From the NCBI RefSeq assembly GCF_963853765.1, contig NC_088856.1, forward strand, positions 29,078,001 to 29,142,000: a stretch of 64,000 bases of DNA, in the 5' to 3' direction. Shown here in pieces: positions 10,507-44,315 of the stretch. The position numbers were made by a program, and so were the translations under genes. The notes below the pieces were generated by a model. The model made no database searches. It was not told where the DNA came from and saw only the letters and a program-made list of their open reading frames with translations. The stretch's first letter is position 1. Each line of letters opens with the position of its first letter. This DNA is from Magallana gigas. Lineage: Eukaryota.

Positions 10507-12790
10507 TCATCAGCATTTGATAAAGTATTTAGAGAGTATTTAGTACAGACCGTTGATAGGGTCAAAATGGCATTTTCTAATTTATGTAGAAATGATCTCA
10601 CTTCAGTTTCTTTGTTTGCTTATCATATATACAAGGTTCCATGCTTAAAACCAAGGACTATAGATAGATATGAGCATTGATTATTTTTAATGTTGATTGA
10701 CGTTTTTTCTTTGAATGATTAAGTAGTCCCAACCTTGGCATCAAAATACAAAATTAAAACATTTTTTTTTAATTTGAAAAGCGTGGATTGAAGTATTTAC
10801 ATATTCATTATACATATTTTAACTTACATATCATGCGGCATGCCGTTTTTCCTTTTTTGTTCTTTGAACATTATTTGTTATTAAGATTTTTCGTAGGGTT
10901 ATAGGATCAACACCAGATGTAAACTTTATATAACTGTGTGATATCAAAGTCATATCATTTGATTATATCCAAATAACAATGTTCAAGGTTATATTTATTA
11001 TATATAAAGTTATAAAAAAATCAGATGCGGTAGTTGTTGATTTCTTTGTTTTTAAATTGTTTGTTATTTTTTCTGTTTGTTTTTTGGCATATTTACAAAA
11101 AAAATGATGCATACACTGTAAAAAAATAATAAAGTTAATACACTCAAATTTTTGTCCGCTTTGATTTTTGATCTTAATATTGGTGATTGGATTCACACTT
11201 ATTTCCATGATTGCCTCAGTCCTTTTGAAAACACTGTTTATCCTGGATAAGCTATGTTTTCTCTTTGGAATAAAAACGACTGTAACATTGTCCTGAGATG
11301 GGGTCTTTTTCTTCAATGATTTCTAGTTCTAACACTGACTTGTATGTTGTTGTGGGAACTGAAAAGAGAAATTTAACAAATAACACATATTAAAATGAAT
11401 CTCAATTCACCCGTCCATCTATCTATCAAATAGATCCGAAAAAAGTGAAATAAACTTACGCAAATTAAGGGCGGCCGGAAGTTCTCTTAGCCGGGGAAGC
11501 AATCCGACAGCATTCAGAAAATACTTGCACCCTTCCGGACCAACCGATCCATTGCTGTTGTGAACACCTAAATAACAAACATAAGATTGTTTATCAATAA
11601 AGGGTCATTTTGTACATATGTGAATGGCGAAGCTACGTAAAATATGGATGACGAACAGGTATGTTTCTACCGAAGTCAGATGGTGGTGGAGAGGAACCTC
11701 CCCTGTTAAAACATGCATTGTCAAACTATACCCCATTTTACTTTTAAAAAGTAAAAAATAAAAATTTTACTTTTATAAAAGAATTCTTTTTTGATTGTTT
11801 ATTGATTTTACTTTTTCATGGTTATCGAGTCGGAAATTATTCTTTTTTGATTTTGAGCCCCTCTCCCCCATTCCACGTCCCTGACACATAGCCCGGTTTA
11901 GATGTATTTAGATGCTTTTGACCCAACCCTCTTCTCTAAGTTGTCACTTGTGTATGACAACTTCAATACGATATGTACATGTAATCATACATGCAGTTAT
12001 TTTTCAACTACACTGTTGTTGTGTCCTTGATAACTCACATTGATGGTATCGTTTGTTGTGGCGTTGGAAGAAATAACAAGTCAGGATCCCTGCCACAGCA
12101 GACGACAGCATTCCCAGCAGGAAGGCCAGCAACTCCTGTATCGGATATAAATCATATATATTATCATGTCTAACAAACCCTCTGTATGATACATGACTAA
12201 AGTGAAACGAAAGGAAGAAAACAATTTAAGCAAGCACACTTAACTATTTTATTGCTGATGTTTTAATATAATACACTTATCACCGATAATTGTCGAGGAT
12301 ATGATATGTCACCAATTTTTAAATTAAAAATTTATAACGATCCACAACACAAAATAAAATGATTTCTTACCCCAGCTGCCATTCACCGCAAATACAGGAA
12401 GTTAAAATAAATCAAGAAAAATACTTATAATCCCTAACAATAACTCGTGAATACTTTCGATATAAACAATATACGCATGTCCCGGTTTTGATCAATCCAA
12501 AGATGCCCGCCAACTCGATATACTAGCTAATATGCTGATTTAATATAATTGTTTAAAATATTAAAAGGTTTTCTGAGTTCAGGGTAGTTTACTTGGTTCC
12601 TATATCTCATGTTACAATTCAGCGAAAAGTATGGAATATTGCCTACGTACATTTTCCAGTGACTGATTTTAATGAAAAGAATCGTTGACGATCTAAAAAC
12701 ACATGAAAGTCAATAATGTAAATGACACAACCCAGTTTGTGCTGTCCATAGATATATTTTTTGGTATTTTGTAACATAATGCTAATGTTA
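10507..12790. repeat. Segmental duplication unit (membrane-protein gene plus flanks)
   Basis: Clearly alignable to 18480-19560 and to 28950-29505 plus 31350-33010. Confidence 0.85.
11252..12382 (-). CDS. Uncharacterised 107-aa single-pass membrane protein, copy A; exons 12382-12371, 12135-12039, 11567-11460, 11358-11252
   Basis: GT-AG introns with matching phases (0,1,1). Spliced product MAAGELLAFLLGMLSSAVAGILTCYFFQRHNKRYHQCVHNSNGSVGPEGCKYFLNAVGLLPRLRELPAALNLLPTTTYKSVLELEIIEEKDPISGQCYSRFYSKEKT*. A paralogue at 31581-32625 keeps every exon length and splice site. Confidence 0.8.
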
Positions 12791-42326: not shown

Positions 42327-44315
42327 ATGGCCGAGTCATCAAGTGTGGAGCCTGAAAAGGAATCATTTCGTTGTCCGATATGTCTCGAGAGGTTAAACAT
42401 TCCTCGATACTTGCCATGTTTACACACTTTTTGTGAGGTATGTATTCAGACGTTCATGTCAAGTTCGACAAACCGAGATAAAGAAGATGATTTGAATGTC
42501 ATCAACTGTCCAGTATGTAGACAACAGGTTAAGGAACCAGAAAAGGATATTTCTAGCGAGGATTGGGCGAAAGAGCTACCGCTAAATAAATGGGCTTTGG
42601 CGATGACATTTAAACCAGAAAACGATTCCATGAAACATTGCATGTTCTGCAAACGGGGAGAGCTAACAGTTTTGGCCACACATTGGTGTAAATCTTGTGC
42701 AGAACCTCTTTGTGACGACTGTAAACGTCTCCATGCAAGGGTCCCTATTCTTCAGGGTCACAAAATTGTTGAGATCAGCCAAATAGAAAAATGGTGTGAA
42801 GCCGTCGATATAGAAGAGACCTGTGGGATTCACAGAGGGAAAACTGTCGACATCTTTTGCAAAGACCACAACGAACTATGTTGTGGTGTGTGCTTTGCAA
42901 ACCGTCATAAAAGATGTGCTAATTTTGATTCAATCGATGCATTCGTGATGAGTCTTGACAAAGACCAAATTAAAGACAAACTTAAATTATTATCCAGCCT
43001 TCATGATTGTATTACCAAGCTGCAGGAGGAAAATAAGAGACAGATTGCTGTTCTCTGTACTTCAAAAGAGGACATTTGCTCTTCATTCGCAAACAGAATT
43101 GAAGAAGCTAAAATGTATTTAGACCAGGCTCATGAACAATGGCTGAAACGTTTCGAGGTAGAACATGCTCACCAAACAGACCAAATTGAGGTAGTGTTGG
43201 ATGAACTAAAGCGATTTGATATCACGGTCACTGAAGCTAGGTCCATGCTTTCATCGGTTCTTGACAACGGTTCTGACAAACAGGTTTTTATAATTCAGTC
43301 GAAAGTTAACGGTCAAATTCTTAGTCACTTCAACCGTTTGAAGTCATTGGATATATGGGACCTGACTGAATCTTATGGTTTTGACACAAATCAACTTGAT
43401 AATATAACGGATTCCATGAAATTTGAAGATGTGATTCTTTCAAAGAGGCCAAGCGATGCTCCAAAGAGAATGTCTGTTCAGGGGAAATCTCTTTTCTTTG
43501 ATTTGCCAACTTCTAAGCCATGGCTAGAAGATCTGGATCTAATGTCTTCAACCTTTCATGAAACATCCAGCTCAAAAACAAACCTTTTGGCGTATTTCGC
43601 ATTATATATAGATGACGAAAATGTTGTCATTTCGGATGAAAATGCATTGAAGGTGTATAATACCTGTACTGAAAAATTGATAAGCACACACCATTGTGAC
43701 AGTAAACCATTTGACATTTGTCATGCATATAGTATGAACAGAATGTATGTTGCATTTGGGACTTTTGTTGTCCAGTATGAAATAAACAATCAGGGTATGG
43801 AATTCATTGAACTTGAGAAGATTCAAGTAGAAGGAGTCGTGCAGGGAATAGCAAGGACTATAGACGGGTTCTTTACCGCCAACGAATCATCAGTCTCATT
43901 TCGATGGAGTGATTTCACAATAAAGTTTTACCTACCATATGTCAAACCAGGAGCCAGGCCTTTTATTTGTTCGTCATTTTGTGGTAGAAAAGTAGCATAC
44001 ACCACAGAACGCTATGTCATAGTCATGGACACAAAGGGAAACAAGTTGTCGGAATATTCTTGTTCCGGTATTAAACCAAGTGGTCTGTCTTTTGATTCTG
44101 ATGACAATATCATTGTTTGTTCATCTAGTAGTCTGCCAAAGCAAATCAAATTTGATGGAACATCAAGGCGAAGTCTGGAAACTGGTTCTGATCATGATCA
44201 CTTTCCCAAGAACATTATATTTCATCCAGAAGGTCACAAATTTATAACAATTAGTTTGTGGAGAGGTATTGTATTACTGTTTGGTCGAATACAAGAATTT
44301 GAAATAGAGAAATAA
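42327..44315 (+). CDS. TRIM copy 5, intact 662-aa E3 ubiquitin ligase (RING, two B-boxes, coiled coil, NHL-like beta-propeller)
   Basis: Same domain motifs as copy 4 in an uninterrupted ORF. Confidence 0.92.
   Translation: MAESSSVEPEKESFRCPICLERLNIPRYLPCLHTFCEVCIQTFMSSSTNRDKEDDLNVINCPVCRQQVKEPEKDISSEDWAKELPLNKWALAMTFKPENDSMKHCMFCKRGELTVLATHWCKSCAEPLCDDCKRLHARVPILQGHKIVEISQIEKWCEAVDIEETCGIHRGKTVDIFCKDHNELCCGVCFANRHKRCANFDSIDAFVMSLDKDQIKDKLKLLSSLHDCITKLQEENKRQIAVLCTSKEDICSSFANRIEEAKMYLDQAHEQWLKRFEVEHAHQTDQIEVVLDELKRFDITVTEARSMLSSVLDNGSDKQVFIIQSKVNGQILSHFNRLKSLDIWDLTESYGFDTNQLDNITDSMKFEDVILSKRPSDAPKRMSVQGKSLFFDLPTSKPWLEDLDLMSSTFHETSSSKTNLLAYFALYIDDENVVISDENALKVYNTCTEKLISTHHCDSKPFDICHAYSMNRMYVAFGTFVVQYEINNQGMEFIELEKIQVEGVVQGIARTIDGFFTANESSVSFRWSDFTIKFYLPYVKPGARPFICSSFCGRKVAYTTERYVIVMDTKGNKLSEYSCSGIKPSGLSFDSDDNIIVCSSSSLPKQIKFDGTSRRSLETGSDHDHFPKNIIFHPEGHKFITISLWRGIVLLFGRIQEFEIEK

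What the first reader, a model, noticed from the sequence alone, without database searches (positions are those of the whole stretch)
10507..44315. Co-duplicated head-to-head module: membrane micro-gene plus TRIM E3 ligases
Each membrane-gene copy points away from a TRIM gene with 2-4 kb between them: A (ATG 12382) with TRIM1 (14432), C remnant (19346) with TRIM2 (23251), and B (32625) with TRIM4 (36802). Intergenic blocks repeat in register (19380-20660 matches 32860-34500; 17990-18470 matches 28290-28680). The array therefore grew as a multi-gene cassette: [A, T1], [C, T2, T3], [B, T4, T5]. In the middle cassette all three genes are broken, while in the right cassette all three are intact. 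Inference: the membrane protein and the TRIMs may share regulation and act as a unit, for example an adaptor with its ligase in innate immunity.
Basis: partly seen in the sequence, partly recalled or inferred. Interest (0 to 1): 0.75.

Follow-up and report, generated by a model that had tools for sequence, protein, structure and literature searches.

The report
Oyster TRIM array dragging a small membrane gene
A small, already annotated Pacific-oyster membrane-protein gene was copied along with neighbouring TRIM ubiquitin-ligase genes by ordinary tandem segmental duplication, and the copies have since decayed independently, so nothing shows that the two genes work as a unit.

Summary
The window is Pacific oyster (Magallana gigas) DNA. 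The repeats are real. Three blocks carry a small minus-strand gene: A and B are intact and C keeps only exon 4. Each block lies 2-4 kb head-to-head with an intronless plus-strand TRIM gene (RING, B-boxes, coiled coil, NHL-like six-bladed propeller).

The small gene is real. It has four GT-AG exons and encodes 107 aa. Three spliced RNA-seq contigs confirm the splicing. NCBI already annotates it as "uncharacterized protein" (XP_011446955.3, XP_011446954.3, LOC105341896/LOC117680426). A vs B gives dN/dS 0.20.

Co-duplication is supported. [C,T2] and [B,T4] are collinear across the whole interval at equal divergence, and the gene trees agree.

T3 groups with T1, not T5. Its true counterpart is a T3-like pseudogene that survives after the T4-position gene only in C. 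angulata.

A functional unit is not supported:
- The small gene occurs only at this locus, so the three pairs trace to one ancestral juxtaposition.
- Fates are uncoupled: A is intact beside frameshifted T1, and in C. angulata relic C sits beside an intact T2.
- The 5' ends lie 1.9-4 kb apart, with transposon insertions between them.

This is ordinary birth-and-death evolution. The scan reached a like verdict on a head-to-head cassette elsewhere in this genome (s1-361680).

The parts
10807..12558 (-). Micro-gene A (107 aa, = XP_011446954.3 / P0141). CDS exons 12382-12371, 12135-12039, 11567-11460 and 11358-11252 (stop included). The 5'UTR reaches at least 12558 and the 3'UTR at least 10807.
   Evidence: Exon borders with GT-AG sites. 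Translation per exon. Transcript contig L003 aligns in four blocks at these borders. Identical database protein P0141.
14432..16402 (+). T1, a clade-I TRIM pseudogene. The RING/B-box ORF 14432-15307 is intact. A 4-nt deletion near 15295 shifts the frame, and there is a second shift near 16200.
   Evidence: tblastn frames 2>1>2. Alignment showing the 4-nt deletion. Pfam RING and B-box. The C. angulata orthologue is also degenerate.
18036..20401 (-). Block C, a relic of the micro-gene. Only exon 4 (about 19246-19353), the 3' region and the upstream flank remain. The equivalent of B 31721-32863 (exons 1-3 and the proximal promoter) is deleted.
   Evidence: The same relic state is seen in C. angulata.
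23251..25225 (+). T2, a clade-II TRIM that is broken here by a 10-nt deletion at 24080 and a 1-nt deletion at 24176. Its C. angulata orthologue (97.5% identical) is an intact 656-codon ORF.
26464..27667 (+). T3, a fragment of a clade-I TRIM (equivalent to residues about 212-620) with several frameshifts.
   Evidence: In the tree it is sister to a C. angulata pseudogene at L001 14111-16305.
29505..32788 (-). Micro-gene B (107 aa, = XP_011446955.3 / P0132). CDS exons 32625-32614, 32393-32297, 31891-31784 and 31687-31581. The long 3'UTR is interrupted in this genome by a 946-bp insertion at 30076-31021.
   Evidence: Transcript contigs L003 and L009. C. angulata comparison.
35250..36553 (.). A 1.3-kb transposable element with about 85-bp terminal inverted repeats, inserted 249 bp upstream of the T4 start codon.
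   Evidence: 2,851 first-look candidates in the genome; the full-length copies scored are mostly 93-97% identical, on many chromosomes. Absent at the orthologous C. angulata site.
36802..38781 (+). T4, an intact clade-II TRIM of 659 aa: RING, B-boxes, coiled coil and an NHL-like six-bladed propeller.
   Evidence: Pfam. PDB sequence match to the KAP1/TRIM2 RBCC region. AF2 model with pLDDT 82 and VIA-align Z 24 to the Lin41, TRIM2, TRIM71 and Brat NHL domains.
42327..44315 (+). T5, an intact clade-III TRIM of 662 aa. No micro-gene lies upstream of it.
   Evidence: No micro-gene was found in the C. angulata T5-type sub-array either.

Best explanation
This is a lineage-specific birth-and-death array of intronless TRIM-NHL-like E3-ligase genes in the Pacific oyster.

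How it grew: a 10-13 kb unit was copied in tandem by segmental duplication or unequal crossing-over. By chance of position, the unit also contained a small four-exon gene on the opposite strand. That gene encodes a 107-aa protein with a single N-terminal membrane helix (residues about 5-27). The unit also contained a clade-II TRIM 2-4 kb from the small gene's 5' end and a clade-I TRIM behind that.

Consequence: the repeated head-to-head pairs are copies of one ancestral juxtaposition. The pairing is inherited passively. After duplication each gene lived or died on its own.

The small protein (inferred): it most likely sits in a membrane with about 4 residues outside and an 80-residue, mostly unstructured cytosolic tail. 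The best-conserved element of the tail is a tyrosine motif followed by an acidic run (T-x-Y-[KRQ]-S-[VM]-L-E-L-E-I-I-E-E-K-D). I read this as a sorting or phosphotyrosine docking signal. I do not read the protein as a dedicated partner of the neighbouring ligases.

Shown: the duplication structure, the gene models, splicing and transcription, the TRIM fold, the single-locus distribution and the uncoupled fates.

Inferred: the membrane topology, the motif function and the absence of functional coupling.
For: Duplication:
- Collinear blocks run from the micro-gene 3' end to the TRIM 3' end for C/T2 against B/T4.
- Divergences match and trees agree. Micro-gene blocks give (C,(B,caB)) with a C-B path of 0.15. 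TRIMs give clade II = T4, caP0002, (T2,caT2), with a T2-T4 path of 0.19.

The micro-gene is real:
- All splice sites are GT-AG and the product is 107 aa.
- Spliced RNA-derived contigs L003 (SRR22371045), L006 (SRR14492782) and L009 (SRR8489863) confirm the exon structure.
- NCBI and UniProt models are identical to my models.
- Exons are 87-96% identical between A and B, against 66-67% for introns 1-2.
- A vs B gives dN/dS 0.20, Fisher p 5e-5.

Single origin:
- The micro-gene DNA and protein match only this locus in the 564-Mb genome.
- The TRIM query gives 1168 first-look candidates. Full-length paralogue clusters on C4 at 18.2 Mb and C7 at 13.4 Mb lack the micro-gene.
- An exhaustive HMMER search with exon 4 and a word search with the full protein find only a handful of oyster sequences.

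Uncoupled fates:
- In the window, A is intact and T1 is frameshifted.
- In C. angulata, A is intact and T1 is degenerate. C is a relic and T2 is an intact 656-codon ORF. B and P0002 are both intact.

No shared promoter:
- Micro-gene transcripts start at or beyond 12558 and 32788. That is 1.87 kb and 4.0 kb from the TRIM start codons, or 2.9 kb between start codons in C. angulata.
- The spacer holds a young 1.3-kb TIR element.
- Only about 0.4-1.1 kb next to the micro-gene and about 100-150 bp next to each TRIM are well conserved between cassettes.
Against: - No expression data were available, so co-regulation by shared distal elements is not excluded.
- With three cassettes, the pattern 'all broken / all intact' in this one assembly could also be read as coupled decay.
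- Both genes are confined to the same young lineage. The nearest TRIMs outside the array are at most 41% identical. That would also fit co-evolution.
- The origin of the [A,T1] pair is unresolved, because the three TRIM clades form an unresolved trichotomy.
- Constraint on the micro-gene is uneven: dN/dS is 0.5-0.9 in some close comparisons.
- The tail motif is read from sequence alone.
Confidence: 0.8

Rival explanations
1. Functional two-gene module. The membrane protein and the adjacent TRIM ligases are co-regulated from the divergent intergenic region and act together. Examples would be a membrane adaptor or substrate that recruits, or is controlled by, the TRIM-NHL ligase in innate immunity. 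On this view selection keeps them linked.
For: - Head-to-head orientation is kept in all three copies and in C. angulata.
- Both genes are restricted to the same lineage.
- The conserved cytosolic tyrosine motif resembles ITIM/ITSM-type docking sites.
- TRIMs are among the most represented gene families in oyster antiviral expression contrasts (PMC6971885).
Against: - All copies descend from one juxtaposition, so orientation is inherited and not independently maintained.
- All four combinations of intact and broken partners occur.
- The 5' ends are 1.9-4 kb apart and tolerate transposon insertions.
- Most paralogous TRIMs, including T5 and the C4 and C7 clusters, have no such neighbour.
Confidence: 0.08
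2. The small gene makes a transcript but no functional protein. On this view it is a young upstream divergent transcript of the TRIM array, and its 107-codon ORF is annotated but not under meaningful protein-level selection.
For: - The family is tiny, has no Pfam match and no convincing look-alike.
- The structure model is low-confidence outside the first helix.
- dN/dS is 0.5-0.9 in several close comparisons.
- Intron 3 and the 3'UTR are about as conserved as the exons.
Against: - The ORF is intact, with the same length and exon phases, in A, B, two C. angulata genes and three transcript contigs from different runs.
- A vs B gives dN/dS 0.20, p 5e-5.
- Exon 2 (the membrane helix) is 96% identical between A and B, against 66-67% for the flanking introns.
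- A 75-aa relative, P0124, lacks exon 3 but keeps the helix and the tyrosine/acidic motif.
Confidence: 0.1

Closest known systems
TRIM-NHL proteins (TRIM2, TRIM3, TRIM71/LIN-41, Brat, Mei-P26)
   Same: [quoted passage not shown] Pfam finds RING and B-box, and phmmer matches the KAP1 RBCC region and the TRIM2/3 RING.
- The C-terminal domain is modelled as a six-bladed propeller. Its best structural matches are the Lin41, TRIM2, TRIM71, Brat and Mei-P26 NHL domains, at Z 23-24 and rmsd 2.6-3.1 A over 228-257 residues.
   Different: - The Pfam NHL repeat is only sub-threshold (E 0.009-0.05).
- No filamin domain was found.
- Sequence identity to solved NHL domains is 9-12%.
- Other six-bladed propellers (lactonases) score within about 2 Z units.
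- The genes are intronless, tandemly amplified and fast-evolving, unlike the conserved single-copy developmental TRIM-NHL genes.
Birth-and-death tandem arrays of immune-type multigene families in bivalves (TRIM, C1qDC, IAP and others)
   Same: - Tandem segmental duplication.
- A mix of intact genes, recent pseudogenes and fragments.
- Copy-number differences between M. gigas and C. angulata.
- Mosaic paralogues that suggest gene conversion.
   Different: An unrelated small gene was carried within the repeat unit and stayed intact in two of three copies.
Transmembrane adaptor proteins (LAT, DAP12/DAP10, SIT type)
   Same: - A very short extracellular part, one membrane helix and basic residues after the helix.
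- A cytosolic tail with conserved tyrosines, including an S/T-x-Y-x-x-V motif.
   Different: - No sequence relationship.
- No ITAM.
- No charged residue in the helix.
- No evidence of phosphorylation or of a partner receptor.
- The resemblance is architectural only.
Bidirectional-promoter gene pairs
   Same: Divergent (head-to-head) orientation.
   Different: The 5' ends are at least 1.9-4 kb apart rather than under 1 kb. The spacer is poorly conserved between copies and holds transposons.

Membership tests
TRIM / RBCC E3 ligases | N-terminal RING finger | tested here: met
   Pfam zf-C3HC4 and zf-RING_UBOX score above their cut-offs in T1, T2, T4 and T5. phmmer matches the TRIM2/3/56 RING structures.
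TRIM / RBCC E3 ligases | B-box zinc finger(s) followed by a coiled coil | tested here: met
   - zf-B_box scores 30.7 bits in T1, above the 24.1-bit cut-off.
- It scores 23.1 bits in T5 and 18.8 bits in T4, just below the cut-off.
- T4 residues 15-302 align to the KAP1 RBCC structure 6h3a, E 1e-15.
TRIM-NHL subgroup | C-terminal NHL-repeat six-bladed beta-propeller | tested here: inconclusive
   - Fold: 24 strands in six blades. The top structural matches are TRIM NHL domains at Z 23-24.
- Sequence: Pfam NHL is below its cut-off.
- Unrelated six-bladed propellers score Z 22.
TRIM / RBCC E3 ligases | Ubiquitin-ligase activity | not testable with these tools
   This needs an in vitro ubiquitination assay.
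Bidirectional-promoter gene pair | Divergent transcription start sites less than about 1 kb apart with a shared conserved promoter | tested here: not met
   - The micro-gene transcript 5' ends are at or beyond 12558 and 32788. The TRIM start codons are at 14432 and 36802.
- The spacer contains a 1.3-kb transposon.
- The TRIM transcription start sites themselves are not known.
Transmembrane adaptor proteins | Short ectodomain plus a single membrane helix | tested here: met
   A hydrophobic stretch at residues about 5-27 is followed by basic residues. AF2 models one helix at residues 2-31. No dedicated topology predictor was available.
Transmembrane adaptor proteins | Cytosolic ITAM (YxxL/I, 6-8 residues, YxxL/I) or other proven phosphotyrosine docking motifs | tested here: not met
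   No ITAM occurs in any family member. A conserved S/T-x-Y-x-x-V motif exists, but phosphorylation is untested.
Co-functional gene module (adaptor plus ligase) | Linkage recurs independently, or the partners are retained or lost together | tested here: not met
   There is a single locus of origin. Intact/broken combinations are mixed in M. gigas and C. angulata.

The most novel reading that the evidence does not exclude
The 107-aa protein is a young, oyster-restricted membrane adaptor. Its conserved tyrosine/acidic tail motif would be read or ubiquitinated by the neighbouring fast-evolving TRIM-NHL ligases. The locus would then be a lineage-specific membrane-proximal immune signalling pair that was amplified as a unit.
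Probability: 0.05. Interest if true: 0.6.

Novelty: new member of a known kind. Interest (0 to 1): 0.25.

Why it matters
Mainly as a caution. In oyster genomes, which are full of tandem immune-type arrays, repeated adjacency of two genes within one array counts as a single observation. It is not evidence of a functional module.

What is useful here:
- A checked gene model and transcript evidence for an oyster-restricted small membrane protein of unknown function.
- A worked history of one TRIM-NHL-like array. It shows pseudogenes that differ between M. gigas and C. angulata, copy-number differences, and mosaic paralogues.

If the small protein did turn out to partner the ligases, it would give a handle on what these hugely expanded invertebrate TRIMs recognise.

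Tried and rejected
- Joined spliced model: not searched. There is no reference for the joined exons, so exons were handled one at a time by reference. Database proteins returned by the tools (P0132, P0141 and others), which equal the model, were used instead.
- Pfam on the exons and on the full micro-proteins found nothing.
- ESM Atlas look-alikes gave LRR-type clusters at 0.82-0.85. That is below the level where shuffled proteins also score, so they were rejected.
- The AF2 model of the micro-protein has mean pLDDT 56. Only the first helix is usable, so no fold search was made.
- Complex prediction with T4 residues 301-659 and P0132 residues 28-107 returned no answer (score 0.00). This is not evidence either way.
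- The 10-kb flanks of the best TRIM homologues in Saccostrea echinata (L004) and C. virginica (L005) hold no micro-gene. This is a weak test, because those TRIMs are only 36-41% identical and may not be orthologous.
- Literature searches for the gene identifiers returned nothing. A search for a bivalve TRIM family survey returned one unrelated paper, and PMC4346834 does not treat TRIMs.
- Foldseek against the PDB ranked G-beta WD40 propellers first. The exhaustive VIA-align search put NHL domains first, and I follow that one.
- A first fuzzy match of the C. angulata exon 1 was misplaced. The caB dN/dS values from that call should be disregarded. The direct alignment shows about 8 exonic differences between B and its C. 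angulata orthologue.
- The N run at 56412-56554 was left as it is.
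Full report
**Source and context**

The window is AT-rich animal DNA, 30-37% G+C. It lies at G000:C4:29078001-29142000 in a 564-Mb, 29-contig assembly. The intact TRIM at 36802-38781 is 96% identical to a Magallana gigas UniProt entry. Its other hits are oyster proteins. The small gene's products are letter-for-letter NCBI M. 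gigas proteins. The window is therefore Pacific oyster. Nothing here is human. The N run at 56412-56554 was left untouched.

**The observation**

Self-BLASTN confirms three blocks that carry the small minus-strand gene: A 10505-12787, C 18036-20401 and B 28276-33715. It also confirms five plus-strand TRIM copies: T1 14430-16275, T2 23105-25367, T3 26521-27677, T4 36655-38909 and T5 42222-44246.

The in-register intergenic matches exist (19385-19949 / 32863-33443, 20153-20401 / 33453-33715, 18036-18445 / 28276-28664). A more sensitive run adds short collinear matches through the rest of the C-T2 and B-T4 spacers. The two intervals are therefore homologous from end to end.

**The small gene**

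- A and B have four exons with canonical GT-AG borders and encode 107 aa.
- I handled the exons separately by reference. The joined model itself was not searched.
- An exhaustive HMMER search with an exon-4 alignment returned full-length database proteins, which I then used by id.
- P0132 (XP_011446955.3) equals model B and P0141 (XP_011446954.3) equals model A. The loci are LOC105341896 and LOC117680426, and the UniProt entry K1PD29 dates from the first oyster genome.
- C. angulata has both orthologues: LOC128159573 and LOC128159575.
- Three Logan contigs from different sequencing runs carry the ORF uninterrupted: L003, L006 and L009. They align to the window in blocks that end exactly at my exon borders. 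Transcription and splicing are therefore shown.
- The contigs extend the 5'UTR to at least 12558 (A) and 32788 (B). The 3'UTR runs about 1 kb, which explains the conserved blocks near 10505-10972, 18488-18942 and 28944-29507.
- A vs B: exons are 87-96% identical against 66-67% for introns 1-2. dN/dS is 0.20, Fisher p 5e-5.
- Other pairs give dN/dS of 0.5-0.9, so constraint is moderate and uneven.
- Copy C keeps only exon 4.

**What the small protein looks like**

- About four residues precede one hydrophobic helix (about 5-27; AF2 helix 2-31). A basic cluster follows, then an 80-residue tail of low model confidence.
- By the positive-inside rule the tail is cytosolic. This is inference.
- The best-conserved tail element is T-x-Y-[KRQ]-S-[VM]-L-E-L-E-I-I-E-E-K-D. 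It is retained even in a 75-aa relative that lacks exon 3.
- There is no Pfam family, no ITAM and no trustworthy look-alike.
- The family is tiny and confined to Magallana-type oysters as far as annotated proteins show.

**The TRIMs**

- T4 and T5 are intact single-exon genes of 659 and 662 aa. They have a RING, B-boxes and a coiled coil.
- The C-terminal 250 residues fold (mean pLDDT 82; above 90 in the propeller) as a six-bladed propeller. The closest solved structures are the NHL domains of Lin41, TRIM2, TRIM71, Brat and Mei-P26 at Z 23-24.
- Pfam's NHL model stays below its threshold.
- T1 has a 4-nt deletion near 15295 and a second frame change near 16200.
- T2 has 10-nt and 1-nt deletions at 24080 and 24176.
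- T3 is a frameshifted fragment.

**History of the array**

A DNA tree of the window copies and seven C. angulata copies gives three well-supported clades:

| Clade | Members |
|---|---|
| I | T1 + (caP0004 + (T3 + a C. angulata pseudogene)) |
| II | T4, caP0002, (T2 + its C. angulata orthologue) |
| III | T5 + three C. angulata copies |

- The micro-gene blocks give (A, transcript contigs) and (C, (B, caB)).
- C/T2 and B/T4 are the same duplication: paths are 0.15 and 0.19, and the blocks are collinear.
- T3 is not T5's duplicate. In C. angulata a T3-like pseudogene (L001 14111-16305) follows the T4-position gene.
- The repeated unit was therefore [micro-gene, clade-II TRIM, clade-I TRIM]. 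This M. gigas haplotype has lost the third member after T4.
- Whether [A,T1] descends from a two-gene unit, or from a three-gene unit that lost its clade-II TRIM, cannot be resolved.
- The array differs in copy number between the two oysters. Clade II is mosaic: synonymous divergence between T4 and its positional orthologue is 0.18 in the RBCC part and 0.58 in the propeller. This points to exchange between paralogues.

**Is it a functional unit?**

The evidence points away from this.

1. Single origin. The micro-gene's DNA and protein hit only this locus in the whole genome. The TRIM query finds 1168 first-look candidates and full-length paralogue clusters elsewhere. The three pairs are one inherited juxtaposition.
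2. Uncoupled fates:

| Cassette | M. gigas (window) | C. angulata |
|---|---|---|
| 1 | A intact / T1 broken | A intact / T1 degenerate (modelled only as a RING-less 539-aa product) |
| 2 | C relic / T2 broken | C relic / T2 intact 656-codon ORF |
| 3 | B intact / T4 intact | B intact / P0002 intact |

3. No shared promoter. The 5' ends are 1.9 kb (A-T1) and 4.0 kb (B-T4) apart. The latter includes a young 1.3-kb TIR transposon that gives 2,851 first-look candidates in the genome and is absent in C. angulata. Another 946-bp insertion sits in B's 3'UTR. Only each gene's own proximal flank is well conserved between cassettes.
4. T5-type TRIMs and the best TRIM homologues in Saccostrea and C. virginica have no micro-gene nearby. 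The second part is a weak test.

A complex prediction gave no answer and is not used.

**Verdict**

The duplication claim is right in substance and wrong in one detail. The small gene is real but already annotated. The 'adaptor plus ligase' idea is unsupported and is best treated as a low-probability hypothesis.

Oyster TRIMs are prominent in antiviral expression contrasts (PMC6971885), so an immune role for the array is plausible. That says nothing about the small gene.

The scan's own notes record a like case elsewhere in this genome that was judged ordinary segmental duplication (s1-361680). I did not re-test it.

Noticed in passing
window 36802-38781 (T4) against L001 10001-11971 (C. angulata P0002) and L008 16467-18437 (caT2): Clade-II TRIMs are mosaic. 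T4 and its positional orthologue differ by dS 0.18 in the RBCC part but 0.58 in the propeller. P0002 and caT2 show the reverse (0.30 and 0.17). The flanking non-coding DNA is 97% identical. This suggests gene conversion or recombination between paralogues. Propeller dN/dS (0.34-0.77) is mostly higher than RBCC dN/dS (0.2-0.3).
   Followed up: partly
window 35250-36553: A 1.3-kb element with about 85-bp terminal inverted repeats. It gives 2,851 first-look candidates in the genome; the full-length copies scored are mostly 93-97% identical and lie on many chromosomes. It sits 249 bp upstream of the T4 start codon and is absent at the orthologous C. angulata site. It looks like a recently active non-autonomous DNA transposon.
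   Followed up: partly
window 30076-31021: A 946-bp insertion inside the 3'UTR of micro-gene B. It is absent from C. angulata and from transcript contig L009. It is related (72%, inverted) to window 17174-17721.
   Followed up: partly
L001 12000-20549 and L002 (C. angulata CM046783.1, about 30.93-30.98 Mb): The C. angulata haplotype carries more TRIMs than this window: a T3-like pseudogene, a 672-aa clade-I gene (P0004) and three T5-type copies where the window has one. This is a copy-number difference between very close oysters.
   Followed up: partly
window about 5500-9300 (+), ORF 8042-8635: The left neighbour of micro-gene A is an F-box gene. It has a Pfam F-box-like match. Its C. angulata orthologue is annotated with an FBXO32 helical domain. 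A universal-stress-protein-domain gene lies beyond it.
   Followed up: no
window 47750-48454 (-): A 234-aa ORF with a CCHC zinc knuckle, probably a retroelement gag remnant. Direct repeats at 46469-46844 and 48534-48908 (89% identical) flank it and could be LTRs.
   Followed up: no
P0124 (75 aa, from the representative protein library; no contig on record): A more distant relative of the micro-protein. It lacks the exon-3 segment but keeps the membrane helix and the tyrosine/acidic motif. Its source organism could not be traced.
   Followed up: partly
same chromosome, about 5.83 Mb before the window start (scan note s1-381039): An unchecked first-reader note describes another head-to-head pair of a TRIM-like gene and a small membrane protein, duplicated as a unit. 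My whole-genome search with the 107-aa protein found no relative there, so any similarity is architectural only.
   Followed up: no
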